A DNA stretch of 64,000 nucleotides from Hypanus sabinus (taxonomy: Eukaryota): the NCBI RefSeq assembly GCF_030144855.1, contig NC_082732.1, forward strand, positions 29,760,001-29,824,000, read 5' to 3'. The position numbers were made by a program, and so were the translations under genes. Shown one piece after another: positions 5,211 through 63,670 of the stretch. How positions within the stretch are numbered: the first letter of the stretch is position 1; every line of letters begins with the position of its first letter. The notes beneath the pieces are model-generated. The model did no database searches and had not been told where the DNA came from. It saw nothing but the letters and a program-made list of their open reading frames with translations.

Positions 5211-5387
5211 TGACATCAATTTAGTCCATCATGCTGATACCTCTTGCTAAAATAAGTAATCTTGAATTTATTTAAGTATATGTATCAATCTGGTCCTTCC
5301 CTCCCAATTAGCCCTCCATAATTCCTTCATTCACTAATTTACTAACAATCTCCTTACTCCATACAACACAAGTCATTTCAAACTTAC

Positions 5388-5793
5388 TGGACAAAGTATA
5401 TTAATCCATTGAGAGTCACCATCTTTGGTACAAGTAGCCACGGAGGCAATGAGCCACACGTCACCATACTCCACAAGTCAATCTCAGGGTCGTAGCACTG
5501 AATTGCCATCGATTCCTCACCAGTAAGGGTTCCAATGGTGTATAGTTTGCCTCGGCAGGCCGTGCTTGAGCAGTTGTCCATAGGGAATGGCATTGGCTGC
5601 AGGACCTCCCAACTGTCCACAGAGTGATCGTAGCGTTCTAGGCTGTCGTGGGCGAGAATGTATATGTGTCCCTTGAGCACAACGGAACTGTGGTATTCAC
5701 GGGCTTGCAACATAGGTGAAACTTCGGTCCACTCATTTACACTGGAATTGTATCGCCACACACAATCATATAATGACGTCCCATCAGAACCAC
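5388..5793 (-). CDS. KLHL21: KLHL21 coding exon 2 (406 bp), kelch repeats
   Basis: Acceptor tttttgtgtaatag|GT at 5793 and donor CA|gtaagt at 5388. Reads [37 protein letters not shown]...[10 protein letters not shown], with kelch GG/Y/W motifs. Confidence 0.95.
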
Positions 5794-5949
5794 CTATTAC
5801 ACAAAAATAAACACAATGAAGTTGTAACAGTCGAAAACTGTCCCTTCCCACCACAGAACCATTAATCATTTCTGCCTCAAGAGAATGCACTCAATGGGAG
5901 TCAGATCCTGTTTGCCAAGAAGGCTTAATGCTGATTTTTAAAATTTTCC

Positions 5950-6160: not shown

Positions 6161-6294
6161 GCCATTGTGTGGTGCTGATATAATGCTCCAAAGCCACAGG
6201 TGCTGGCTTTTGGGTAAGACGTTAAAGCAAAGGTCAATTAATATCTTGGGTAGATATTAAAAATTAAGTCATTATTCTTTGTATCCTAGCAATC

Positions 6295-6635
6295 ACCCAA
6301 CATGTCTAAGCCTATCACCTCCCTCATGGTTCCGCCTCCTTCTACTACCCATACTGCTTTCCCCTTACATTCCTTCTTCACCTTTCCTGCCTATCCCCTC
6401 CCCCACCCCTTGGTCTTTCCCCTTACTGGTTTTTCACCTGACACCCACCAACCTTCTCCTTCCCACACTCCCCCCACCTTCTTTATAGGGCCCCTGCCCC
6501 CTCCCTCTTCAGTCCTGACGAAGGGTCTCAGCCCGAAACGTTGACTGCTCGTTTCCACAGATGCTGCCTGACCCGCTGAGTTCCTCCAGCATGTTGCATG
6601 TGTTGCTTTGACCCCAGCATCTGCAGAGTATTTTG
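6295..6635 (+). mobile_element. Penelope-like element 3' end/pseudo-LTR
   Basis: Pyrimidine-rich tract, then agtcctgacgaagggtctcagcccgaaacgttgactg...gatgctgcctgacccgctgagttcctccagc. The same unit follows the GIY-YIG remnant at 14859-14966. Confidence 0.75.
6510..6547 (+). ncRNA. Minimal type I hammerhead ribozyme motif (intact core)
   Basis: cagtc-CTGACGA-A-gggt(ctca)gccc-GAAA-CG-TT-gactg. Stem I cagtc/gactg, stem II gggt/gccc, conserved CUGANGA and GAAA, palindromic ACGU in place of stem III. Confidence 0.7.
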
Positions 6636-7419
6636 TGTCCAAGCCCAATATTCTTTTTAGAAAAAAAATCACATTTTTCTGCTTGGGAGTTCGGTGAAAA
6701 ATTTGCTGCAGAACTCCAGTATAAGGGGGGGGGGGGGGGAACTTCAATATGTGCAAAGCATTTTGAAGAATTACTTTTTCTGCCTTCTTCCACCCTCAAC
6801 AATTTTCTGTGGGCATCACCATGGAAACATCACAGCCAAACTTGATGAATTAATGATGATCTGCAGCACAAAGAGGCCAATCTGTGGAATGGCTTTAAAA
6901 AATCTACAGCTTATCTCACTGTTCTATCAAGTTGTGTACTTTTCTCCATTTTAAATGTTTAATCCATTTCCCCTTAAACTTTAAAGGATCACTACTTCAT
7001 GAACAACTCTCCATGTAAAGGGGGGTTCCTCTAAGAGTCTCACCAACCTCACCAACCAGGGCAACTGATCCTCACAATTTTAAAACAATCTCAACAGTTG
7101 CTCAACATTCTTCTCACAGTGAACAGGACTCCTTCCCTTCCACTCCTTGCTCTCGTTCACTGGGGTCAATGAACCTCCCTTTGTTCTTCACACCCCCACC
7201 CCCGATCATTTCCAAAAACACAAAGGGTAGTTAGTGCCAAGTTTGAATAACCATTAGCAACAGGAAGCTTGGTTGAAATCAGACGTGGCAAGGCACTAGA
7301 AATCTTCAGTATGGTCAGTGTCCGAGCCCAAGCTCAGAGTCATGAGTTTGGGGTGTAAGTTTAGGTCTGTGCTGCTTTGGCAGACTGTTTAACTCCAGCA
7401 CCGCAGTGGTCTCCTACAG

Positions 7420-7915
7420 TTAACACACAGAAGACGCTGGAGGAACTCAACAGGTGAGGCAGCATCTATGGAGGGGAGTAATCTGTCAATATTTCAGACC
7501 GAGACCCTTCATCAGGGCTGGAAAGGGAGGAAGTGCCCAGAATAAGGAAGTCGGGGAGGGGAAGAAGTGCGTTAAATGATAGATGAAGCCAGGTGGGTGG
7601 GGGACAGGGGTGAAGTTAGGAGGTGGAAGATGATAGGTGGAAAAGGTAAAGGACTAAAGGAGGAGGAATCTGATAGGAGAGGAGAGTGAACCATGGGAGA
7701 AAGGGAAGGAGGAAGGGCATCAGGGGGAGGTGATAGGTAGTTGAGGAGCAGAGAAGTAGTAAGCAGGAAGCCAGAGTGGGAAACAGAAAAAGAGGAAAGG
7801 GGGAAGGGGAAAAATTACCAGGTTAGTGTCCAGCAGGTTGGTGGTTACCCAGATGGAATACAAGGTGTTGGGCTGGTGGCCTCATCATTGCAGAAGAGAA
7901 GGTCATGGTGCAGTA
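7420..7915 (-). mobile_element. Penelope-like element terminal fragment
   Basis: acacacagaagacgctggaggaactcaacagg...gagacccttcatcagggctg followed by a purine-rich tract. Decayed hammerhead at ~7484-7520. Confidence 0.7.
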
Positions 7916-8339: not shown

Positions 8340-8720
8340 TTTCCTCCACCTCTTGAGCGTAGGAGAATGAGGGGATATTTGATCAAGTTATAGAAAATTC
8401 TGAGAGGGTATAGATGGGGGTAAAAGCAAGCAGGCTCTTTCCACTGAAGTTGAGTGAGCCTAAAACTGGGGGTCATGGGTTAGGGATGAAAGGTAAAATA
8501 TTTAAGGGGAACACGAGGGAAAACATCTTCACTTAGAGGACGGTGCAAGTGCAGAATGAGCTGTCAGCATAAGTGGTAAATGTGGCTATGATTTCAACTT
8601 TTAAGATAAATTTTAATAAGTACATGGATGGGAGAGGAATGGAGGGCTATGGTCTATGTTCAGGTCAATGGAACTCAACAGAATAATAATCTGACATGGG
8701 CTATTTCTATGACTCTATGG
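8340..8720 (+). mobile_element. CR1-type LINE 3' end
   Basis: aggagaatgaggggatatttgatcaagttatagaaaattctgagaggg (RRMRGDLIEVYKIMRG-like)...ttcacttagaggacggtg. A near-sibling copy lies at 57480-57820. Confidence 0.75.
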
Positions 8721-8883: not shown

Positions 8884-9359
8884 AATTTTATTAAGTCCAT
8901 GTTCTTTGGTTTCCTCCCAAGCAGCAGAGCAGTTTCTCCTTTCTTACTCTATCAAGCTGGCCGGTGGTGTAGTGGCATCAGCACCGAACTTTAAGGCAAA
9001 TGGCCCCGAGTTCGAATCTAGCTGGCTACTTGCATGCTCTCCATCTGTGTCACATTGAGCTAGCAACTTGACCTTGTAAAAAACAGTCGAATGCTACAGA
9101 AAGGGCAAAAATGCTGCCCAATGTGCCACAAGGTGCAAAAAGGAAAACACAGCTATCAAAACCTTTCCTAAAAAATCTTCAACTTAAATCTCTAACTGCT
9201 TCTGCTCATAGAACCTTTTCTATTCCCTCCATAAACAAATTTTGCTTCGGTGTCAATTAAAGCTCGGCCACTACACCACCGGCCAGCTTGATAGAGTAAG
9301 AAAGGAGAAACTGCTCTGCTGCTTGGGAGGAAACCAAAGAACATGGACTTAATAAAATT
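8884..9359. repeat. Perfect 93-bp inverted repeat (arms 8884-8976 and 9267-9359, 290-bp spacer)
   Basis: Base-by-base reverse complement of 9267-9359 equals 8884-8976. Confidence 0.93.
8956..9152 (+). mobile_element. tRNA-headed SINE with 7-bp target site duplication
   Basis: A box TGGTGTAGTGG and B box GAGTTCGAATC. Flanked by ctatcaa at 8949-8955 and 9153-9159. Confidence 0.7.
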
Positions 9360-9964: not shown

Positions 9965-10580
9965 AGCGGGATGGTAGTGTAGTGGATAGCATAACGCTTT
10001 ATAGTGTCAGCAATCAAAGTTCAATTCCTGCCGCTATCTGTAAGGATTTTGAACGTTCTGTGACTGCATGGGTTTTCTCTGGGAGCTCTGGTTCCCTCCC
10101 ACATTCCAAAGACATACAAGTTAGGGTTAGTAAGTTCTGGGATGCAATGGTGGCACTGGCAGCATGCCAACAGTTGCAGGCTGCCCTCGGCACATCCAGG
10201 ACTGTGCTGGATGTTGACACCAACAAGACATTTCACTCACAAGAAAGAGAAAATCTGCAGATGCTGAAAATCCAAGCAACACACACAACATGCTGGAGGA
10301 ACTTAACAGGCAGGGCAGCATCTATGGAAGAGAGTACAGTCGATGTTTCGGGCTGAGACCCTTCAGCAGGACTGAAGAACAAAAGTTGAGGAGTAGATTT
10401 AAAAGGTGGGGGAAGGGGAGGGATAAACACAAGGTGATGGGTGAAACTGGGAGGAGGAGGGGTGAAGTAAAGAGCAGGGAAGTTGATTGGTGAAATACAG
10501 GGCTGGAGAAGAGGGGATCTAATAGGAGAGGATAGATTCTTTATGCTTTGATGACAAATAAAACTAATATTTAATCTATA
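9965..10580. mobile_element. SINE (+) interrupted by a PLE terminal fragment (-, ~10240-10535)
   Basis: SINE body ggttttctctgggagctctggttccctcccacattccaaagac, then aaatctgcagatgctg...catgctggaggaac...gagacccttcagcaggactg, then the SINE-like tail resumes (gacaaataaaactaat). Confidence 0.65.
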
Positions 10581-10983
10581 AAGTGGAAGAGGATCTCTGT
10601 GGCGGGTAATCCTCAGACTCTCTGATTGTGGTGTTAGTGAGGCGAAGACAAGTCTCTGTACAAACCTGCTTCAGCGCTCGCGTGGATCTTGTACACAGTA
10701 GGATTGTGTGCTGTCAGATTAGCACTGGATGCCATCTGAAATTGCCCACGCGCAGTGATCTCAGAACTGGCTACAACTGGGTCAATGGTCACCTGCTCAG
10801 AATTAGAAAATATATGGTCCTCCAAGCCCACAAGGTGGGATCCTGACCTAAATGAATAGGTGGCGGGGTTGGGGGTGGGGGGAATCAAATGAGCCTACAT
10901 GTGTTGCTATGGAGACAGAAATAATGTTCTTTGCTAGCCTTGAGGCCCTCTGGGACAGTGCTGGGCCAGACGCGAATACTTGC

Positions 10984-12010
10984 CTGTTACATAGATGTCA
11001 TTGCCAAAGGCAGTGATGCTGTAGCCACCAGCCAGGTGGTCAGGGAACTCAGCGAGGTATCGCCACTGGCCAGTCTGTGGGTTGAAGCAATCCACCGTTA
11101 CCAGCTCGTCACAGTCCTTGTTGCAGCCGCCCACCACCACCAGTATCTCGGCCAGGCCAGTGGAGGGGCGGGCCCTCATCCTCTCACACGGGTAGTCATG
11201 CCGGTCGTACTCGGACGACTGAAAGGCCCGGGCCTGGTGGATGAGCTTGAGACAGAATGGGGAGTAGTAGACAAGCGGGTCGCTCTCTACGTAGGCCAGC
11301 AGGTAGAAGCGGCGGATGAAGGGCAGACGCACATGCTCAAAGAGCTCGGGCCAGAAGCGCAGCCGGCGCTTGGGATCGGCCTTGACCCACCGCAGCGCCA
11401 GTTGGTAGGCCACCTCCTCTTTGTCGACGTGCAGCCTGTCGTCAGACAGGTACTCGAGCAGCCGACGCTGGGGCAGCGCCTCGAACTCCTTCTCCTCTGA
11501 CAGCTCGATGATGTGGCGCAGAATGAAGCTCTTGGCACTCTCGGCCAGGCTCCGGCAGGCGTAGGCCTCAGCGAACTCCTGGATCTCCAGGCAGTTGGTC
11601 ACGTCCAGCTGGCGCTCCAGGTAGGCGCAGCAGGCCTCCTTCACTGAGTGGAACTGGAAGAGGTCGGCGGCCCGGGCCAGAGGTTCCACGTTACTCTGGG
11701 TGACAGTCACCTGGCCGGTGTAGGAGAAGTCCAGCAGTAGGCCTAGGATCTCGGCCTTCACCCCATGCAGCTCCACCCGCTCGGCATAGCTCTCCTTCAG
11801 CCGGCCGGCAAACATGGCCTTGAAGTAGTGGCTGGCTGCTGCCAGCACAGTGCGGTGACAGGGGAAGTCCTGGCCATCCACCCACAGGGTCATGTCAAAA
11901 AACTTGCGTTCTATCCGCAGCTCGTTGATGCCCTGCAGGATGTTAAGGGCGTGACTGGGGTCAAAGAATGGCAACACAGAGGCCTGGGTTACTATGCTCG
12001 GCCGTTCCAT
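10984..12010 (-). CDS. KLHL21: KLHL21 coding exon 1 (1027 bp): BTB, BACK and start of kelch domain (CUL3 substrate adaptor)
   Basis: ATG at 12010. MERP...[20 protein letters not shown]...[19 protein letters not shown] (BTB)...[17 protein letters not shown]...DIYVTG. Ends at a GC donor (G|gcaagt) in phase 1. Total CDS 1027+406+73+312=1818 nt, 605 aa. Confidence 0.96.
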
Positions 12011-13109: not shown

Positions 13110-13640
13110 CGGCAAACACAAGGAAATCTGCAGATGCTGGAAATTCAAGCAACACACACACAAAATGCTGGAGGAACGCAGTAGGTCAGGCAGCATCTAT
13201 AGGGAGAAGCGCTGTCAACGTTTCAGGCCGAGACCCTTACTATCTTTTCTTTCAGTTAGTCCTGACAAAGGGTCTCGGCCCAAAATGTCGACAGCACTTC
13301 TCCCTATAGATGCTGCCTGACCTACTGCATTCCACCAGCATTTTGTGTGTGTTGCAATCTGTCATGGCCTCCATTTAAAAAGCTCTCCCAGAATGCTGGC
13401 ATTTCCAACAATGGTAACAATCTGCTGGAGGGACAGTGGGTTGAGCAGCATCTTTGGCAAGGTGGTGGTGATGGGGGGGAAAGAGGGGAAGGAATTGTCA
13501 ACATTTTGGGATGAAACCCTGAATCAGAACTGTCAAAATGTCAGCAATCCATAACCCCCACAGATGCTGCTCGACCTGCCAAGTTTCTCCAGCACATTTG
13601 TTTACTGCTCCAGACTCCAGCATCTGCAGTCTCTTGAGAG
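13110..13640. mobile_element. Two adjacent palindromic PLE-derived elements (13110-13357 and ~13380-13635)
   Basis: Arms ~13149-13238 and ~13269-13356 are inverted copies sharing private variants. The second, older element has the same head-to-head layout. Confidence 0.7.
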
Positions 13641-14089: not shown

Positions 14090-14770
14090 CTGATAAATTG
14101 AAAGTGCACTTTGGGAGGACAGGTGAGAGGCGACCACACAAATGAAAGATGGGATTGCAAGGAACTATCAAGGAATAGAAGAACCTTGCCGCACAAATTC
14201 AAGGATTGCTGAAGGTGGCAGCACCTGTAGATGAGGTGGTGAAGGCAGAAAATGGGAAACTTGCTCTTGTTAGCTGGGCAGAGAACATGGGTGCAGGGAG
14301 ATTGAGTTAGATCACAGCTAGATTTACTGTGTACGGTTCGAGTATTGTGCATTGATCTCATTGGTATTTTACAGGAAGTTGCAGAGGATTCACCAGAATG
14401 TCACATGCAGTGTTCGGTTATGATGAGAAATTGATTAGGTTGAACATGTTTTTCTTGAAGTGAAGAAGGCTGAGGGCAACCTGATAGAGATATACAAAAC
14501 TAGGAGGAGTACTGATGGTAAAGATAATTGGAAGTATTTCCCTCAATCAGAAGCACCTAAAACTAAAGGACATGGATCTCAGGTATGCAGTAATTGGTTT
14601 AGAGAGGAGTGTAAATTTGGACAAGACAGCCTGAGTGGGTGGTAGAGGTAAGAACTCTCAGAATACTTAAAAGTACCGAGATAAATACTTCATTCACCAA
14701 AACACTCAGGGCAAGGGATCACATGTAGATAAATGGGATTAGTATGGATAAATACTTATAGTTAGTGTTA
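14090..14770 (+). mobile_element. Old CR1-type LINE 3' fragment
   Basis: gaaggctgagggcaacctgatagagatatacaaaact (RLRGNLIEIYK) and gaggattcaccagaatg (RFTRM) motifs. Confidence 0.6.
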
Positions 14771-15517
14771 GTCACTCTCCACGAATCTCCCTCCTGGCAC
14801 TTAACCCTGTAATTGGCAGATGTGCTACACCTTCCCATTAGCCTCCATTTAAGGCACCAAACAGACCTTCGAGGTGAGACAACACTTCACCTGTGAATCT
14901 GTTAGGGCCATTTTCTGTATCTGGTGCTTCCAGTGTGGCCTCCTCTACGTTGGTGAGACCCAACAAGGAACGACACCTTATACTCTGCCTAGGTAACAGA
15001 AAACATAGAAAACCTACAGCACGTAACAGGCCCTTCGGCCCACAGTTGTGCCAACCATGTAACCTACTTTAGAAGCTGCTTAGAATTTCCCTACTGCATA
15101 GCCCTCTATTTTTCTAAGAACCTCCGTCCTCCATCCTGACGGCATGAACATCAATTCCAGTAATTACCCATCCCTCTCTTCATTTCCCCTCTTAGCCCCC
15201 CCTTACCTCTTCTCCTCCCCTGCTTATTAACTCCTTCTCCCCTGTCCACTCTCCTTCTTCTCTAGCCTTTGACCTTTTCCATCTATCACCTCCCATCTTC
15301 TTACTTCATCCTCCCCCCGACACACCTGGCCTCACCTATCACCTTCTAGCTTGTACTCCTTCCCCTCCCACCCCCTTTCCCCCAGCTTCTTATTCTGGCA
15401 TCCTTCCCCTTCCTTTTTAGTCCTGATGTGGGTCTTGGCCCGAAATGTTGGCTGTTTATTCATTTCCATAGGTGCTGCCTGAGCTGCTGAGTTCCTCCTA
15501 TATTTTGTGTGTTGCAG
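14770..15517 (+). mobile_element. Penelope-like retroelement remnant with GIY-YIG endonuclease fragment and 3' terminal repeat
   Basis: 14859-14966 translates to KQTFEVRQHFTCESVRAIFCIWCFQCGLLYVGETQ, the typical PLE Uri/GIY-YIG signature. Followed by a pyrimidine tract and a hammerhead-like unit at 15418-15454. A short tail of another element is inserted at ~14997-15120. Confidence 0.85.
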
Positions 15518-16189
15518 TGGTTGACAAGGACATGGTGTGCTGGAGGGCCCGAGCCTGTCCTCTGTGACTCATCCCATGACTCCGGAAGCAGAGCCCTTGA
15601 ATATTTCAGGGCTGAGGTAGATGGATTATTCATAACAGGGTGAAAGGGTACCACAGATGGATCAGAATGCAGAATTAAGTTTACAATCAGCTGTCAATTT
15701 ATAAAGATTGCCCCATGTATATCGAAATATACAACAATGTCATTTACGTCAAGGACCAACACAGTCCGAGGATTGTACCGGGGTAGCCCGCAAATATCAC
15801 AATGCTTCCAACGCTAATATAGCTACCCACAACTCATTAACACACTTATTAAGTGACAAAACATCTTGAAAGGCTGTGTGACCTACTTCTGCACCATATT
15901 CACATTATCGCAGGGAACATCACTTATTGTGCTATGGAGATCTCAGAGCTACGGTCCTCTAACTAAGGACATTGTGTAAACTTAACTAATTAAAAAAAGG
16001 GGTGAAGATTGACCCTTAAAGAAGAAAAAAAATCACTATTTTAATGGACACATTTAAAGGTAGCTCTTATTTTACCAGCTCTTCAATCTCAGCTGAGTTG
16101 CAGTTCACAACTCAGGAGCTGCAGTGTTGATGGTAATGACATCAGGGGGAACGATGAACCAGAAAATAGGTTGGTTTGTAAAGTGAGCG

Positions 16190-39475: not shown

Positions 39476-41279
39476 GTAAGATCTGATTTAAACAGCATTG
39501 AGGTTGGGGGTGGGGCGGTTGAAGATTATGGTATCTCCTTGTGTTTGATTTTCGTGTATATATAAAATCAAGAAATTCCACTTATAAGATGAAAATTTCC
39601 GTCGATTTCTGTCGGCAGGCGATTCGATTTCAGACCCTAAGGTTTCGGAGTATAGTACAGCGCCTTGCGCCATCTTGTTGATTTGCATATATATTTAAAC
39701 CCCTTAATAATCGGAGAGATAGGTTGGCGATAACGTGTCGCCCACCGCCCTTTCATTGCTGCCTGTCTGAAGTTGGGGATTTGTTGGGGGGGGGGGAATG
39801 TTTCCATTTTAGACCGGTTTTTAAAGTCCTCCCTTCATATGTCTGCTGCCTGTCTGTCCCTCGGAGATCGCCAATCCCTGTGTGTTTTTTTAAAAATAAT
39901 GAATATTCGCCATCTTGCCTCTGACCCTTCCCTTTTTCTGTCTTCCCCCTTTTTGAAAATAATAATCTCATTTTCCTAGTTAATGGTTCGTGCATCTACT
40001 GTCCTCCGCTCTTCTCCCCCTCAGCCCCGAACTCCTACAACACCCCACCCGTCACTATCTTAAGTAATTTCACCAATGCTTGAATGTCCCTACTTCCATG
40101 TATTTTTCAAAAAATCCTTTCGGCGGTACCCTGGGTGGCAACTTAATTCAGTCAAATATAAAGATTTACTACTAATAAATTGTATTAAAATATACAAGGC
40201 TAAATCGGCCCCTTTGTTTGTACAGTCACTCAGAGCTGTTGTATAAGATGGACCCCCTTGGATTTGTTAATTCCCACCGTATAAAATGTGCACGTTTGTG
40301 TGCAACCGAGCAGATCAGCCCCGGGGAAGTATTAAAAGTGAGATTTGATGGAAACGGATGCTTGCCAGGGTAGCTCAGCTTTAAATCTGTAGTGCCGTAT
40401 ATACAATGTTTAGACCGAGAAGTTACGATGTAGGTGGCATTTTACAACTGGGGAAATGAGCGTTTATCTCCAGTTGAAGTCGGCACTCTCCGCGCTAAGC
40501 TAAATTACGCACAGGTTGATAAAACACGGTGCTGTTAAAGTCTTGAGTGCCAGGATTGTGGACACTGGCTTTAATGGTTTCTGATGTCACCAGTTCCCCT
40601 TCTCCACATTTCACTGACAAAATCGAGTTCAGTTTACAGTTTTTCTCCACACAGTTGGGAGTTGCACAGATTTCCAGTGGTAGCTTGGTTTACTTGATGC
40701 ATTTAATATCATTTTACAAATGCCTAATTGTATTTTTGGGACAAACTCGTTGAGCTAGCAATGTTAAGCAACACACAGGATGCTAGAGGAGTTCAGCGGG
40801 TGAGGTAGTATCTCTGGACAGTTGTCCAGATTTCTGCAAAACTTAGAGCATCAAAAAAAAAAGTGCGGGAGGAACTCAGCTGGTCAGGCAGCACTTGTCG
40901 GGGGACTGACATAATCGTCTGCAAAATTTCGGCCTGACAGAAGAAAAGTCCTGCAATGAATTCAGCTGACAATTAACAGAAATCAGTTTGAAAACTTCAT
41001 TCACTGTGGCACAATAATGGCTGACACAAAGCAATAATCTGCTTCGCCCACACCATCCCTGTAAAACACTATAGTTTAAAATGGTTAATAGCAGAAACTG
41101 TACCTCATTGATTAGAGAAAGTAATGTTTGGAATATTAATGAGGTAAGGGAAAAAGGCAGTGAAGAGGACTCAAAATACATTTTAAGACTGCTGACTACC
41201 AATACACATCCAGGGTGCCACTGATCTAGTGTTGAATAAATACATTGCTAACCTTCTTTGTCTCTCTGAATCTTACCAG

Positions 41280-45917: not shown

Positions 45918-48760
45918 GGTGTCAGAAGCTTTTTCTTGATTTGTTTTATACCTGGGAAAGAGAAAAGAGAATCTTGAAATGATAATGAGGCAAAAAACAA
46001 GCCTGTTTTTAAGACAAAAGATCCTGATGGACTTGCTTGGAGACTTCCACCCATTCATGCAAGAATTGCCTGCTTTTTTGACTTTCTTTCTGCACACCCT
46101 CATGGTTTCCATTTCAGAACCTACAAGACTACTATATCAATGATAGTCTTGGCTAGTCCATCATGGGATGGAATTTGGGCATTGGGGGTGGGGTGGTGTG
46201 GGAGGTGGGGGCAAACATGCCAACTACAAACAACATTTCCTTTACCCGTCTGAGCTTTCTGTTGGTTATCACCCTGACTCCACCACCCTCTGAGTACAAA
46301 ATAAGAAAATCCACAAGAGAAAGTAAGGATGGCAATAATCTTAGTTCATCGTTCTCATCTTCCTTCCTCTGCACTCATTTGTTTCATAGTCTCAAGCAAA
46401 CAAAAGGGGCCCAGTGCAATAGACAAAGCCTTAAAACACTCTAAATTGAGAAAGGGGGAAAAAGAATAAGTAATATGTTTAACTAGTAGCCTGGCATTTA
46501 ACAGTGCAATAAAACCTAATAATGCTGTAAGTACACTGCAACTCTTTCATATTCAGTCAGTAAAGGTGGGTTAAAGTATCTTAATTTCCAGCCAGGATAC
46601 ACATTTGATACTATAGCACCTCTCTTCACAAGTGATGTTTGCCTTTTTATTTCATATTTCCTGAATTTTACTGTTGTATCAAGAGAAAACAATGCCCTTT
46701 TTGGTACCGACAATATATTTTGCCCACCTGCATTTAAAAAAAAAATCAATTACAATTGATCCAGGACTAAATATTCTTTCTGGAAAGGTAGATAACTGTG
46801 TTAGAACATTTGGTGGGTGGGTTCTCTTTTTTTGTAGTGTGACTGACATTACTAGAAGGGTTTGGAATGGGGAAAACAACTTGGAATTCTTTTTTTAAGG
46901 TTATTTCTTTTTTTTTATTTTTCAGAAAACTTTACACAGTTTCTGATGCCTAACATTTGGTACTTAAACTCCTACAGTGAGAAGGAGAAAATAAGATCTT
47001 TAGGAGCTAGTTTTTAAATGGTCATTGAATTAATTTCCATCTTTATGTTGTTTACAGACTATAACATTAAACTGCTGGTTGAAAGTTAGCTGTTTAAAAA
47101 GTCTGTTTACAATTAAGTTTAGACGTGCTGTATTTTTTAAATCATATCTGTTGATGGTACATTAAATCTGTTATGGCAACATACTGGAAATAATTCAGAA
47201 TAGCAAGTCAAGTTAAAAGTTTATGTGAGTAGGAGATCACCATCTATTGAAGTGTCCCCATAACATTCATCTGTTTTTTTTTAATGTGGTCTTCTAGCTA
47301 CGTGAAGGGGATTGTCTTTCTTGTGCAATGTTCCTTCTCTATATATTGCAAAATGTATATTGCCATAAAATATTGTACCTGCATTTTTATTTTCTGTTTT
47401 ATCCTACGGATATTTGCCAATTTGGATCTTCTCAATCCTGACATTAGTAAACTCACTTACGAGAAACAGCTCCCAAACTTTTGCCTATGGATAAAGTAAA
47501 TGAAATGAGAATTCTCCCCTTAATTTACATCTCACCTGCTTGCCCATCTTTGTTTTCTGTGTCTTACCACTATAACCAATGATCTAGGCTAGCTAGACGT
47601 AACTATGGGGATAAAAGATATAGTGGGTACAAAAAGATGTCTGACAATCAATCCCCTTTGCACTAATGCACACAAGATTAATTTGCCTCCTCAGTCACTC
47701 ATTCAAATAATAAAAAATTTCATCCACCAGAATATTCTCTTTTCTCCCACCCCACCCCATATTTTGCCACTACAAGAAAAGTGTGAACTGGTCGTCTCCC
47801 TTGTCAATAAATCTACCTCCTCAAACTTACTGGGATGTGAGGAAACAATCATTTTATGAGGGGAAAAGCCCGTGTTCATTTCCCATTGAAAATCAGATAA
47901 GATTCTGAACCTTTAGTACCACACACAAAACGCTGGAGGAACTCAGCAGGTTAGGCAGCATCTATGGAGAGGAATAAAGAATCAACATTTCAGGCTGAGA
48001 TGCTTCATCAGGACTGGCCCATAGATTCTGCCTGACCTGCTGAGTTCCTCCAGCATTTTGTATGTATTACTCTGGATTTTCAACATCTGCGGAATCTCTT
48101 GTCCCTTTAGTCCTTCCTAGTTGTGATTGCTGGCGTTTGCATTGTTGGACAATGAGCAAGGACAGAGATGAGGTCAGGTGTGTTAATCAGAGAGAATTAA
48201 TTCACACACGCACGCACTCACTAAAGGCTTGAGATGTAAATAATAGCTGGAATGGCCAGCAGATGGAAGGTGACTGATCCCTGTAAAACTGTTGAAAGAA
48301 AGTCAACTTAATCAGGAGATAAAACCCATATCTGACACATATACAATTTAATTCATAAGGATCCCAGAAATCTATCGTAGTAAATCATAGTTGTAAAATG
48401 TTCCTTGGTATGTGATCAAAACTCATTTTATCACACTCTTCCAGAGGAAAACTTATCCTAGCCGCAACCCCATTTTAGTTACTTTAATGAGGGTGACTTT
48501 TATAAAGCAGCTTTGCAACTTTACAAGGACTGGTGGGTGCTTTTGCTCCCAATGGGAATATCTGCAGTACTTTGTCATGCAAGACTAACAAGTCTCTGAT
48601 TTAGGGACGCTTTGCAGTGATGTTGCAAGGAATGTTGAAATGTCTCCATGGAAGGTTTATCAAAGCGGAACAAAGAAAACCTTGTTTCTGTGAAACTTTG
48701 TACGTGTATATCGGAAGTTATTTTGTAAATAAAGATTTAACTATTGGTATTTTAATTGAT
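45918..48760 (+). other. Probable PHF13 3' UTR
   Basis: AT-rich and mostly unique sequence after the stop. AATAAA at 46508-46513 and 48728-48733 (ttttgtaaataaag), with several miRNA seed matches. The end point is inferred. Confidence 0.5.
47918..48100. mobile_element. Palindromic PLE-derived element downstream of the PHF13 stop
   Basis: cacacacaaaacgctggaggaactcagcaggttaggcagcatctatgg ... ccatagattctgcctgacctgctgagttcctccagcattttgtatgt. Confidence 0.75.
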
Positions 48761-50819: not shown

Positions 50820-52080
50820 ACTTTTTTCCAGATTAAAAATGGAGCTATAGGAACTTGTGTAATCTGAAGCTTTGCCCAAACCTTTGTGGAATAGGTTGGA
50901 TCAGTTTGTCTCATCTGGCACAGGTTCCATCTCTCAATTCATTTTGTGTTTCAGTACTGAGGCAGCTTCCTGCATTCATCCAGAACTTGGAAATGTCATT
51001 ACACTTGCTGCTGATTTCTACCTTGTTCTCACAATTACTTGATTTACATATTCTCCGTCTCCATCTTAGTGGGGTAGCTAAGCTAATATCTAACACAGGT
51101 ACTGTTAACTATATTTCCTCCCACACTGCTTTCTATAAGAACTCCATTCTATTTTTCTCAAACCTTCCATCTCTGCAGTAACTGCTTTGATGATGACATT
51201 TTCCACACAGATGCCTTTGCCTTATTTTTCCTCATTTACCAGTTACATTTCACCTATTTCCTACAACTTTCTCCAGGCATGGTTAGGATCCCACCAGTGT
51301 CTTTTCTCCATAAAACCATAAGACATAGCAGAATTGGGCCACTCAGCCCCTCAGGTCTCCTCCATCATTTGATCGTGGCTGATTTATTTTCCCTCTCTAC
51401 GCCATTTCCTCAATGAGCACCTTTCATAAGTTCCACCACCTTCAAAACCAAATCCACTGGCAGACTCATCTCCTTTTTGGCTTTCTGAAGGGATTGTTCC
51501 TTTTGTGACTCCCTGGTACACCTCACTTTTCCACGCAACCATAGGAGGTACAACATCTGTACTTTTACTTTAACTGTTCCCACCATCCAGGAACCTAACA
51601 GACCTCCCAGGTGAAGCAGTAATACATTTGTATTTCTTTTTACACAATCTAATGTGCTCATGATATTGGACAAGCCATAAACATAACAGATGGCCAATTT
51701 ACAAAGCACTTCCATTCCATCTGGTCAGAGATGTCTAGGATGGAGTGTGAGCGGGATAAAAGAAATTAAACTGTCAGGCCTGAGCTTCTAGCTTTTCCTT
51801 AGCCCACTCACATACCATCCTAAACATCTCTGACCTCCTGCACTGTGTTCAACCAGATCTACATAAGCACTCTTCATTCTAGCAACATACAACTTATGAA
51901 TATTAAGATCAAACTTAGCCATTTCAGGTAACACAACACTTCTGTTTGTCAGAACTGGCCAGTCCTGTTGTAAGATGATCCATTTTATATTAACTTGGCT
52001 ATTTCTCTTTCCATGGACATTGCTGTGCATTTTCAGCATTCCTGGTTTCCTATTACTCACCAATGATGGCCTGCATTTCA
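50820..52080 (+). mobile_element. Old Penelope-like element (RT to endonuclease remnants)
   Basis: ttccagattaaaaatggagctataggaact (FQIKNGAIGT, a decayed QxxGxAMG motif); gtgactccctggtacac...gcaaccataggaggtacaacatctgt...cccaggtgaagcag, parallel to 14800-14900. Confidence 0.55.
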
Positions 52081-56908: not shown

Positions 56909-57479
56909 GTGGGTATTTGGACAAGTTGGAACTCATGAAGTCTGGAGTATTTCAGAATTTGGGTGGGGGTGTGGGAATTAGAATGTTTGCTTCACTGGGG
57001 AACATTAGAATTTACCCATAGTGCATATCACTCCCATTTGAATCGAAGGACATTGCTGTTCAGGCTGACTTGCTAATGCAGTACTGCAGGGATACTGTTC
57101 TGTTGGCAGTGCCATTTTCTTTTTGGGTGAAACGCTACACCCTTGCGTCTGAAAATATGCTTTTGCTGGTTTATATTTGTTGTTGTACTCAAGTTCTTTT
57201 GAACCAAGTGCAGACTAGTGAGCAAGAACAACAAGGTTTGGGCCCCAAAACACCAACAATTTCTTTCCTCTCTCTCACTGATGTTCCTCGATCTGTTGAG
57301 TTCTTACAGCAGGGTGTGTGTTGCTCAAGAGCAACAGTTCTAGCTGAATTCAATAGGCCTATTAAGCCAGCAGTCTGGAAAACTTCGAAGTTGGTGCTAA
57401 TACAAATACTAAATGGTTAATCAACACACCCTGTTGGTTGTAAGCAATTGCTAATCTCCCTAGCATAGGGAAATAAGGG

Positions 57480-57825
57480 AAGATTTGATAGACATGTACA
57501 AAATTATGAGGGGTATGGAAAGGGTTAATGCAGGCTTTTTCCACTGAGATTGGGCGAATCTAGAAATGGAAGTCATAGGTTAAGGGTGAAAGGTGAAATA
57601 TTTAAGGGAACCTGAGGAGGGAGCTTCTTCACTCAGAGGGTGATGTGAGTGTGGAATGAGCTGCTGAGGGAGTGGCGGATGTGGGTTTGATTTCAACATT
57701 TGAAAGTAGTTTGAATAAGTACATGAATGGGATGGCTATGGCCCAAGTTGGGTTGAAGGGACGAGGCATAGTAACATTTCAGCAATGACTAGATGGGCAG
57801 AAGATCTTGTTGCTCTATGACTCTC
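57480..57825 (+). mobile_element. CR1-type LINE 3' end in THAP3 intron 3
   Basis: gatttgatagacatgtacaaaattatgaggggtatgg (DLIDMYKIMRG)...ttcttcactcagaggg. Confidence 0.75.
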
Positions 57826-62149: not shown

Positions 62150-63670
62150 CTGAGTTGAGGGACAAACCTGTAAAATAAGCACCACATTCATGAGATGGGC
62201 TTTGCCATCAAGAATGAACCCGGCCGCCATTTCAGCAACTCACTTTGCAGAATTATTGAGAGTCTCAGGACCTTTGGGCTCAATCCCATCAAAGGATCAA
62301 CCCTTGAAACTTCAAATGAATTGGGGATTAATGTTTCCACTTTCAAAAAGAAAAACAGCTGATCTGCATCCCAAAGGGAAACAGATCAATCCTCCTGAGT
62401 GACTTCAGTGGCAGCATGGAAAAAGATGTACCCCATTGGCAAGGTATGTTAAGCAAGGAATAGGGAAGACTAATTCCGGTAGGGTGCTTGGAGCGCAGCT
62501 TTGTCATAATTAACTTCATGTTTCATCAGAGGGACAAGCAGAATATCTGGTACAACTAGAACCTGTGGAATTAAATCATTGCCTAAGTGTGTGAATCAGC
62601 AAAGATAATTGGATCTGCACACCATAGATACCAATGACTTTTGACTGACCATCATCTAATCTGAAGCAACACATACAAAATGCTGGAGGAATTGAGCAAG
62701 TCAGGCAGCATCTATGGAAATAAATAAGCTGTCGATGTTTTGGGCAGGGATCCTTCTTCAGAACTGAAAAGGAGAAAGTCACTAGTATAAAAAGGTTGGA
62801 GGAGAGGAAGGAGGCCAGCTAGAAGGTGATGTGTGAAGCCAGGTTGGAAAGATAGAGCTGGAAAAGAAAGGATCTGGTAGGAGAGGATGGTGGATCAAAG
62901 GAGGAAGGGACCCAGGGGTAGGTGCTAGGCAGGTGAGAGAGGTAGGCCAGAGTGGGGATAGAAGAAGAGGGGAGGGGAAAGGGATTTTTTTTTACCAGAA
63001 GGAGAAATCGTTATTCATGCCATCAGGTTGAAGGTTACCCAGATGGAATATAAGGTGTTGCTCCTCCACCATCTTTCCCCTTCCTTTTCAGTCCTGAAGA
63101 AAGGTCTTGGCTTGAAACACTGACTGTTTATTCATTTCTGTAGATGCTGAGCTGCTGAGTTCCTCCAGCATTTTGTGTGTGTTGCTCTGGAATTCCAGTA
63201 TCTGCAGAAGTTCTCATGTTTGTCATCTAATCTGCACTCTTTCTCCAAAACTTTGCCCCAAAATATTAGTGTCAATAGGAGTATTGCCACAAGAAGTTCA
63301 TTTTCAATGCTCTCAAGTTTCCTCCAGAACTGGCTCTTCTTGCACAGCTCCTCAACAATCCATCAACTCCCAGATCTCTGGACCCACTAAGTGACTAGAG
63401 CTTATGGACTGCCCTGTGCACCATAATTGACAACTGTGAAGAAATTCTTGGCTTCACTAACAGAAAGAACCAGGACTGGTTTGATGAGAATCAAGGACCT
63501 AATTCACAGGAAATGCAAGGCATTCTGGATAAGACACTTAACTTTTGTTTTGGGGGATCAAACAGGCACCTGAAGGTGGAGTCAGAGGAAAGACAGAAGA
63601 TGCAGCAATTCCCCCACAGCCATGAGATGTTCCAGTTCTTCAGCTATCATCTGTGGCCTAACACCTAAGT
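62150..63670 (+). mobile_element. Fragmented RTE-clade LINE
   Basis: catgagatgggctttgccatcaagaat reads HEMGFAIKN (RTE endonuclease GVGFAIK motif, ~62188-62215). 63435-63491 reads CEEILGFTNRKNQDWFDEN (RTE QDWFDEN motif). Interrupted by the PLE fragment. Confidence 0.65.
62660..63215. mobile_element. PLE fragment with inverted terminal repeats
   Basis: Left arm gcaacacatacaaaatgctggagga..., purine tract, right arm cagtcctgaagaaaggtcttggcttgaaac...ttcctccagcattttgtgtgtgttgc. Confidence 0.75.

What the first reader, a model, noticed from the sequence alone, without database searches (positions are those of the whole stretch)
6510..6547. Intact minimal hammerhead ribozyme in a Penelope-like terminal repeat
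Seen: cagtc CTGACGA A gggt-ctca-gccc GAAA CG TT gactg. This gives a perfect 5-bp stem I, the CUGANGA and GAAA catalytic boxes, a 4-bp stem II and an NUH site (GUU; other copies have GUC/AUC). Stem III is reduced to the palindrome ACGU with no loop, and there is one extra A after CUGANGA. Established: PLEs carry minimal type I hammerheads that work as dimers through a palindromic stem III, and an extra A at that position is tolerated in the CChMVd hammerhead. Inference: this very abundant ray repeat is a self-cleaving RNA module, here an extremely short loop-less form that could fold only as a dimer. This copy is antisense to KLHL21.
Basis: partly seen in the sequence, partly recalled or inferred. 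Interest (0 to 1): 0.8.

Follow-up and report, generated by a model that had tools for sequence, protein, structure and literature searches.

The report
Fossil Penelope-type minimal hammerhead ribozyme copy
A 38-base stretch in an intron of a Kelch-like gene does spell a complete minimal hammerhead ribozyme, but it is one truncated, dead copy of a very common Penelope-type jumping gene whose dimer-dependent ribozyme is already described, so it is real but ordinary.

Summary
Bases 6510-6547 (+) read exactly as reported. They are the only place in the 64 kb that fits a minimal-hammerhead descriptor, and none of 200 shuffles matched at the strict setting.

The motif sits in a repeat with about 17 copies in the window. 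These copies share a 3' end and have variable 5' ends. Four pairs lie head-to-head. Three longer copies run upstream into the end of an ORF, one of them with a GIY...YVG/CxxC remnant. This is the insertion signature of Penelope-like elements (PLEs).

The loop-less ACGU stem III, the extra base after A9 and the G10.1-C11.1 pair are the published features of metazoan PLE "min-HHRs" (Cervera & de la Pena 2014). The form is therefore standard, not unusual.

This copy is the least decayed in the window (10.8% from consensus), so its intactness fits neutral survival. It has no intact same-strand partner and is antisense to its host gene. Its GUU site is a CpG-decayed GUC.

The 11 window copies show no stem covariation above shuffles. 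Nearest-neighbour energies favour inactive folds over the double hammerhead.

Verdict: a real sequence fossil of a known ribozyme class, with no evidence of activity at this locus. The scan has already noted this family 277 times on other pieces of the same genome.

The parts
6510..6547 (+). Complete minimal type I hammerhead motif. Predicted cleavage is between U17 (6542) and G1.1 (6543).
   Evidence: Sequence. Only descriptor hit in the window, 0/200 shuffles at the strict setting. Core table.
6510..6514 (+). Stem I 5' strand, CAGUC. It pairs with 6543-6547 (GACUG), 5/5. In a dimer this helix must be swapped between the two molecules.
   Evidence: The topology argument is inference, modelled.
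6515..6522 (+). CUGACGA box (C3-A9) plus the extra unpaired A before stem II.
   Evidence: The extra A is present in 10 of 11 family copies. It is a published feature of PLE min-HHRs.
6523..6534 (+). Stem II hairpin, GGGU-CUCA-GCCC, with a G10.1-C11.1 closing pair.
   Evidence: It is the only helix that RNAalifold recovers across the copies.
6535..6542 (+). GAA, then A15.1 C15.2 G16.2 U16.1 (the palindrome ACGU, a loop-less stem III), then U17.
   Evidence: GUU is most likely a CpG-decayed GUC, because other copies keep TCGAC.
6281..6648 (+). Approximate extent of this insertion. It comprises a C-rich 3'-UTR-like segment of about 230 nt, the hammerhead, and a tail of about 100 nt (CCACAGATGCTGCCTGACCCGCTGAGTTCCTCCAGC...CAGCATCTGCAGA...). 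The 5' end falls about where the family's ORF stop would lie.
   Evidence: Alignments. Distance from ORF stop to C3 in copy c62772 is about 230 nt. Both boundaries are approximate.
6273..6280 (+). Candidate target-site duplication TATTCTTT. Its partner is at 6649-6656.
   Evidence: Weak: an 8-nt match arises in 5-10% of controls.
7407..7880 (-). Longer family copy. Its core bases are intact but stem I is broken (3/5). Upstream it reaches an ORF end, QHLVFHLGNHQPAGH*.
62645..63069 (-). Longer family copy that carries the last 25 codons of an ORF, VEEQHLIFHLGNLQPDGMNNDFSFW* (62995-63069, stop at 62992-62994). It lies head-to-head with the copy at 63082-63208(+).
14853..15540 (+). Longest family copy. 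It holds an endonuclease remnant with GIY-type/YVG spacing and CxxC (..AIFCIWCFQCGLLYVGET.., 14853-14993). The ORF tail ERHLILCLGN / LHPDGMNINSSNY is split by an unrelated insert of about 130 nt. The 3' UTR and a hammerhead lacking A9 follow.
   Evidence: The Atlas lead points to PF01541 GIY-YIG. There is no HMM-level confirmation.
13127..13364 (.). Head-to-head inverted pair of 5'-truncated copies, 13270-13127(-) and 13253-13364(+).
13392..13629 (.). A second, older head-to-head pair.
47895..48093 (.). Head-to-head pair, 48020-47895(-) and 48018-48093(+). The + copy is truncated downstream of the hammerhead.
10254..10535 (-). Family copy in the same intron, sense to the host gene. Its core is broken (A6 to C, G16.2 to A).
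40759..40937 (-). Two 5'-truncated copies in direct partial tandem.
5384..5890 (-). Host-gene exon encoding Kelch repeats. Together with the BTB-BACK-Kelch exon at 10934-12010(-), it brackets the intron that holds the finding.
   Evidence: Pfam. PDB KLHL hits.

Best explanation
The site is a sequence-intact but almost certainly inactive fossil. It belongs to a dead insertion of about 370 nt that holds only the 3' untranslated end of a GIY-YIG-type Penelope-like retrotransposon. The insertion lies antisense in an intron of a Kelch-like gene. The family's 3' end encodes the minimal, loop-less type I hammerhead already described for metazoan PLEs. In an active master element (inferred from the literature, not shown here), a read-through transcript of a tandem pLTR-ORF-pLTR unit carries two such motifs. 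Their ACGU palindromes pair into a shared 4-bp stem III, and their stem I strands swap. Each core then cleaves the other copy after GUC, probably helped by the element's own protein, which trims the RNA to unit length. The copy at 6510 keeps all core bases simply because it is the least decayed copy in the window. It has no intact partner on its strand, and its cleavage triplet has decayed from GUC to GUU.
For: The motif is exact and non-random. The family has about 17 copies with a shared 3' end and variable 5' ends. There are four head-to-head pairs and one partial tandem, matching the published PLE insertion structure. Three copies continue upstream into an ORF end about 230 nt before the motif. 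One of them has a GIY..YVG/CxxC remnant that the Atlas places among GIY-YIG clusters. The motif shows all four emergent features listed for PLE min-HHRs: a base between 9 and 10.1, G10.1-C11.1, a palindromic 15.2/16.2, and consensus families. This copy is 10.8% from the window consensus, against 13-25% for the others. From those divergences I estimate about 0.4 intact copies expected by neutral survival, against 1 observed. No tRNA head and no tandem array were found.
Against: No reverse-transcriptase domain was found in the window. The endonuclease remnant got no Pfam, PDB or large-database hit, so the PLE assignment rests on architecture, a motif read by eye, an Atlas lead and the literature. 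No stem covariation exceeds shuffles, and RNAalifold recovers only stem II. The nearest-neighbour model disfavours the active dimer. In the monomer's best fold, G5-G8 pair with C15.2-U17. Rfam hammerhead models do not match. HHR cleavage was dispensable for insertion by an Anolis PLE in vitro.
Confidence: 0.8

Rival explanations
1. The repeat is a separate non-autonomous element, either a SINE-like or retrozyme-like unit built around the hammerhead and mobilised in trans by PLE proteins. On this view it is not a set of randomly 5'-truncated PLE copies.
For: Most copies are short (100-400 nt) and very abundant. The 5' end of the 6510 copy falls about at the ORF stop, so it could be a 3'-UTR-only unit. 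A 2026 preprint argues that animal retrozymes derive from PLE pLTRs and reports them in one chondrichthyan. Earlier first-reader notes suggested SINE-like units.
Against: The 5' ends differ from copy to copy. Some lie inside the motif, others 170 nt upstream, and others inside the ORF. There is no tRNA-like head and no tandem array. Three copies are contiguous with coding remnants.
Confidence: 0.1
2. The conserved sequence is kept for something other than self-cleavage, for example as a hairpin recognised by the PLE RT/EN during priming. On this view the hammerhead boxes are a vestige.
For: The monomer folds into one closed hairpin with the core sequestered (-12.9 kcal/mol, 67% of the ensemble, z = -2.2). 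Published min-HHRs cleave weakly. HHR mutants did not affect in vitro insertion, and no RNA-seq ends mapped to the cut site in Anolis. Naiad PLEs thrive without HHRs.
Against: The exact CUGANGA/GAAA/UH boxes are the family consensus, as they are in PLEs across animals, plants and fungi, where some are fast monomeric ribozymes. C3/G8 rescue mutants behave as expected for a true hammerhead.
Confidence: 0.08
3. The hammerhead resemblance arose by chance in a C-rich repeat.
For: Rfam gives no hammerhead hit even at E<=10, and the window copies show no covariation.
Against: 0/200 shuffles match the strict descriptor. The boxes are the family consensus, not a peculiarity of one copy. The extra features match the published class.
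Confidence: 0.01

Closest known systems
Minimal hammerheads (min-HHR) in the terminal repeats of metazoan Penelope-like elements (Cervera & de la Pena 2014, PMC4209133; Lunse, Weinberg & Breaker 2017, cited in PMC6765202)
   Same: Type I topology. No stem III loop, with a palindromic 15.2/16.2. An unpaired base between A9 and G10.1. A G10.1-C11.1 pair. Short open stem I of 4-5 bp. Location near the 3' end of the element. Most genomic copies are solitary and truncated, and some are paired on opposite strands 100-700 bp apart.
   Different: Stem II here is only 4 bp with a tetraloop. The Schistosoma families described have 7-8 bp. I found no paper holding this sequence, so the elasmobranch family itself seems undescribed in the searchable literature.
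Poseidon PAc element of Anolis carolinensis (PMC11167929)
   Same: [quoted passage not shown] That motif is inactive without added protein.
   Different: In PAc the ORF start lies at stem II. In this family the ATG inside CUGAUGA opens only about 21 codons (reading of the consensus). Here the motif lies about 230 nt after the ORF stop.
Double hammerheads of newt satellite 2 and ASBVd (Forster et al. 1988, cited in PMC4209133 and PMC6765202)
   Same: An unstable stem III is rescued by pairing two copies into one extended helix III.
   Different: Those keep a 1-3 bp stem III with a small loop and have loop-loop tertiary contacts. This one has neither.
Non-LTR retrozymes of animals (PMC7229834; bioRxiv 10.64898/2026.07.22.740005)
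   Same: Hammerhead-bearing, non-coding, related to PLE pLTRs, and present in non-mammalian vertebrates.
   Different: Retrozymes are tandem arrays of canonical type I hammerheads and are depleted from introns. Here the copies are dispersed single units and inverted pairs, there are no arrays, and the copy is intronic.
CChMVd (+) hammerhead with an extra A after A9 (De la Pena & Flores 2001, cited in PMC4209133)
   Same: An extra unpaired base at the 5' end of stem II is tolerated.
   Different: That is a viroid ribozyme with full helices and tertiary contacts. It is a functional analogy only.

Membership tests
Hammerhead ribozyme (type I, minimal) | Conserved core: C3 U4 G5 A6 N7 G8 A9, G12 A13 A14, A15.1-U16.1, H17 | tested here: met
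   All core bases are present at 6515-6521 and 6535-6542. H17 is U, which is allowed but is a CpG-decayed C.
Hammerhead ribozyme (type I, minimal) | Helices I and II flank the core, with a G10.1-C11.1 pair | tested here: met
   Stem I is 5/5 and stem II 4/4, with G6523-C6534.
Hammerhead ribozyme (type I, minimal) | Helix III | tested here: inconclusive
   Only the 4-nt palindrome ACGU is present, and it cannot pair within one molecule. A swapped dimer is topologically possible but scores -19.3 kcal/mol, against -25.8 for two monomers.
Hammerhead ribozyme (type I, minimal) | Stems supported by compensatory changes across homologues | tested here: inconclusive
   Across 11 window copies, 84.5% of cells are paired against 84.8% in shuffles, and the covariation score is 0.240 against 0.233. 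The test is underpowered. It also uses decayed dead copies rather than active lineages.
Hammerhead ribozyme (type I, minimal) | Match to curated covariance models | tested here: not met
   No Rfam hammerhead family matches at the gathering score or at E<=10. My reading is that those models expect a stem III hairpin.
Hammerhead ribozyme (type I, minimal) | Mg2+-dependent site-specific self-cleavage | not testable with these tools
   This needs transcription and cleavage assays.
Penelope-like element (EN+ PLE) | TERT-like reverse transcriptase ORF | tested here: inconclusive
   Only the 10 longest ORFs were scanned. They gave only host Kelch domains. No copy in this window reaches that far upstream.
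Penelope-like element (EN+ PLE) | C-terminal GIY-YIG endonuclease with a CCHH/CxxC motif | tested here: inconclusive
   The remnant AIFCIWCFQCGLLYVGET has GIY-X10-YIG spacing, and PCNWQMCYTF lies upstream. In the Atlas, 59 of 100 nearest named clusters belong to the set whose best cluster carries PF01541 GIY-YIG (score 0.91). Pfam, PDB, a 1.8-billion-protein HMMER search of the ORF-tail piece and a word-index search all gave nothing.
Penelope-like element (EN+ PLE) | Heavy 5' truncation, partial tandems, and an adjacent inverted 5'-truncated copy | tested here: met
   Copies have variable 5' ends and a common 3' end. Four head-to-head pairs and one partial tandem are present. The feature is as described in PMC8557442.
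Penelope-like element (EN+ PLE) | Hammerhead motif in the terminal repeat near the 3' end | tested here: met
   The motif lies about 230 nt after the ORF stop and about 100 nt before the 3' end.
Non-LTR retrozyme | Tandem arrays of units, each with a canonical type I hammerhead | tested here: not met
   Tandem Repeats Finder reports no arrays in the window. Copies are dispersed or inverted.
tRNA-derived SINE | Pol III head and a defined 5' end | tested here: not met
   ARAGORN finds no tRNA-like sequence. The 5' ends vary between copies.

The most novel reading that the evidence does not exclude
The family is extremely abundant, and in a double hammerhead each core cleaves the partner strand. 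Transcripts carrying an intact motif, such as an antisense RNA over this intron, could therefore pair in trans with sense-oriented copies embedded in other RNAs and cut them. The dispersed fossils would then form a genome-wide, concentration-dependent RNA-cleavage network rather than inert debris.
Probability: 0.03. Interest if true: 0.7.

Novelty: new member of a known kind. Interest (0 to 1): 0.15.

Why it matters
It adds a cartilaginous-fish family to the catalogue of Penelope-borne minimal hammerheads, and it shows how dense these fossils are (about one per 4 kb here). It opens no new question, because the architecture, the need for a dimer and the link to PLEs were all published in 2014-2017. 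Its practical value is for annotation. The many 'intact hammerhead' calls in this genome should be read as neutral survivors of one repeat family, not as independent functional ribozymes.

Tried and rejected
- Rfam at the gathering score on the whole window, and at E<=10 on 6400-6660, gave no hammerhead.
- A literature search for the family's core string found no papers. Lunse et al. 2017 is not held in the library.
- Database confirmation of the ORF remnants failed by every route. Pfam on the 47-aa and 31-aa pieces found nothing. HMMER of the 31-aa piece against 1.84 billion representatives gave 0 hits. The word-index search of the 47-aa piece found no candidates. PDB gave no hits. Only the Atlas feature search gave a GIY-YIG lead.
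- Covariation on the window copies was no better than shuffles. RNAalifold recovered only stem II.
- The candidate target-site duplication TATTCTTT is not significant, since it arises in 5-10% of controls.
- My first dimer model, with intramolecular stem I, was a pseudoknot and was discarded. The swapped-stem-I model was used instead.
- A SINE head and tandem arrays were sought and not found.
- KLHL21 identity cannot be settled with the PDB. The best hits are KLHL3 and KLHL11.

Full report
**Observation.**
- Stem I is CAGUC/GACUG, 5 bp.
- CUGACGA is followed by one extra A.
- Stem II is GGGU/GCCC around the loop CUCA.
- GAAA follows, and then CG, so that A15.1-C-G-U16.1 forms the palindrome ACGU with no loop.
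- U17 comes next, then the 3' strand of stem I.

I wrote a descriptor for this class: CUGANGA, 0-1 extra base, stem II, GAAA, palindromic 15.2/16.2, U, H, stem I. It hits this site and nothing else on either strand of the 64 kb. In 200 dinucleotide-preserving shuffles the strict setting gave 0 hits and the loosest gave 2. Rfam gives no hammerhead match at the gathering score or at E<=10. I read this as a limit of models that expect a stem III hairpin.

**The carrier.** The motif is part of a repeat. BLAST and nhmmer find about 17 copies in the window. They share a block of about 130 nt: the hammerhead, then CCATAGATGCTGCCTGACCTGCTGAGTTCCTCCAGCATTTTGTGTG...CAGCATCTGCAGA.

The copies end at the same 3' position but start at different 5' positions. 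Some start inside or after the motif, some about 170 nt upstream, and some further still.

Four pairs lie head-to-head: 13270/13253, 13536/13536, 48020/48018 and 62773/63082. One pair is a direct partial tandem, 40937/40834. Heavy 5' truncation, partial tandems and an adjacent inverted truncated copy are the published hallmarks of Penelope-like element insertions, whose hammerheads sit in the pseudo-LTR near the 3' end (PMC8557442).

**Link to an ORF.** Three longer copies continue upstream into coding remnants.
- c62772(-) carries VEEQHLIFHLGNLQPDGMNNDFSFW*, ending about 230 nt before the motif.
- c7530(-) carries QHLVFHLGNHQPAGH*.
- c15358(+) carries ERHLILCLGN and LHPDGMNINSSNY, split by an unrelated insert.

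Further upstream, c15358(+) also carries PCNWQMCYTF...GTKQTFEVRQHFTCESVRAIFCIWCFQCGLLYVGET. By eye this last stretch has GIY-X10-YIG spacing with interleaved cysteines, preceded by a CX4CxxC-like linker. That is the arrangement expected of PLE endonucleases of the Neptune type, as described.

The ESM Atlas feature search puts the 47-aa piece among clusters carrying PF01541 GIY-YIG. That set accounts for 59 of the 100 nearest named clusters, with a score of 0.91. This is a lead, not a test. Pfam, PDB, a full HMMER scan with the 31-aa ORF-tail piece and a word-index search all returned nothing, which is unsurprising for short decayed pieces. No reverse transcriptase was seen in the window. The PLE assignment is therefore strong on architecture and only suggestive on protein homology.

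**Comparison with the literature.** Cervera & de la Pena 2014 defined exactly this object: a min-HHR with no helix III or loop 3 that can only act as a dimer. It occurs in both terminal repeats of PLEs and is scattered in thousands of solitary copies in fishes, coelacanth, frogs and reptiles.

They list four features that emerged beyond their descriptor: a base between positions 9 and 10.1, G10.1-C11.1, palindromic 15.2-16.2, and consensus families. All four are present here, and the extra A is kept in 10 of 11 copies. They also note dual motifs on opposite strands 100-700 bp apart, as seen in this window.

Activity of such motifs is low in vitro even as dimers. In the Anolis Poseidon element, cleavage occurred only when the element's protein was added. 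It was dispensable for in vitro insertion, and no RNA-seq ends mapped to the cut site.

**State of this copy.** Of the 11 copies that retain the motif region, only 6510 has all core bases and both stems. c7530 has an intact core but a broken stem I. The others carry core substitutions such as A6C, G8A, G12A or loss of A9.

The 6510 copy is also the least diverged from the window consensus, at 10.8% against 13-25% for the others. With about 17 fixed positions, I estimate that neutral survival predicts roughly 0.4 intact copies among these, against 1 observed. Intactness is therefore no sign of selection.

Other copies keep TCGAC where this one has TTGAC, so its GUU is a CpG-decayed GUC.

The insertion spans roughly 6281-6648 and so starts about where the ORF stop would be. 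An 8-nt flanking repeat, TATTCTTT, is a possible target-site duplication, but it arises in 5-10% of controls.

**Structure tests.** Pair counts on the 11 copies give 84.5% paired cells against 84.8% in shuffles. The covariation score is 0.240 against 0.233. RNAalifold keeps only stem II. The sample is small and consists of dead copies, so I call it inconclusive.

Alone, the 38-mer folds into a closed hairpin in which G5-G8 pair with C15.2-U17 (-12.9 kcal/mol, 67% of the ensemble, z = -2.2).

Stem III cannot form within one molecule. A dimer must therefore also swap stem I strands between the two molecules, which I infer from chain topology. That double hammerhead evaluates at -19.3 kcal/mol, against -25.8 for two monomers and -29.0 for an inactive extended duplex. 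Nearest-neighbour models ignore tertiary and protein stabilisation, so this result does not exclude activity, but it fits the weak activity reported.

**Context.** Pfam finds BTB, BACK and Kelch domains in minus-strand ORFs at 10934-12010 and 5384-5890, and PDB hits are KLHL proteins. The copy therefore sits in an intron and is antisense to the gene, which means the pre-mRNA carries the complement and not the ribozyme strand. The paralogue name KLHL21 was not testable. No intact plus-strand partner exists in the window. The nearest plus-strand copies, at 13253 and 15411, have broken cores.

**Rivals.**
- A discrete SINE- or retrozyme-like element is disfavoured. The 5' ends vary, there is no tRNA head, there are no arrays, and three copies join coding sequence.
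- A non-cleavage role for the conserved hairpin cannot be excluded.
- Chance is excluded together with the family consensus.

**Verdict.** This is a real sequence fossil of a known ribozyme class carried by a Penelope-type element. It is a new family member at most, and nothing indicates activity at this locus. The scan already holds 277 notes on this motif from other pieces of the same genome. One follow-up there reached the same conclusion, and I reached mine independently from this window.

Noticed in passing
window 8884-8976 and 9267-9359: A perfect 93-bp inverted repeat (100% identity) with a spacer of about 290 bp, in the same KLHL intron. It could be a young foldback or MITE-like insertion, or an assembly artefact.
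   Followed up: no
window 8356-8633 and 57462-57732; also about 14250-14700(+): Copies of another repeat, 73% identical to each other. Their translation reads ..LFPL...TRGH..K.KG..FK......FTQR.V..WN.L.. From memory this resembles the C-terminal end of CR1-type LINE ORF2. One copy abuts the 5' end of the long PLE copy at about 14780.
   Followed up: partly
window 14994-15125: An unrelated insert of about 130 nt splits the ORF tail of the PLE copy c15358, between ..CLGN and LHPDGMN... It has no other copy in this window.
   Followed up: partly
window 6556-6627 and the equivalent stretch in other copies: The conserved tail after the hammerhead contains AGATGCTG...CAGCATCT, a 7-8 nt inverted repeat about 60 nt apart, and a small GCTG-N8-CAGC hairpin. 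This could be a 3'-end structure used in priming. Not analysed.
   Followed up: no
window 6515-6521 versus other copies: In the family consensus, CUGAUGA contains an ATG that opens only about 21 codons (MKGLGPKRR...HRCCLTC*). This differs from the Anolis PAc element, where the ORF starts at stem II. In this copy the ATG is ACG.
   Followed up: partly
window 6727-6740: A run of 14 G about 80 nt downstream of the insertion.
   Followed up: no
window 51590-51655(+) and 51713-51751(-): Very weak tblastn echoes of the PLE endonuclease pieces (E about 1). Possibly an older PLE remnant.
   Followed up: no
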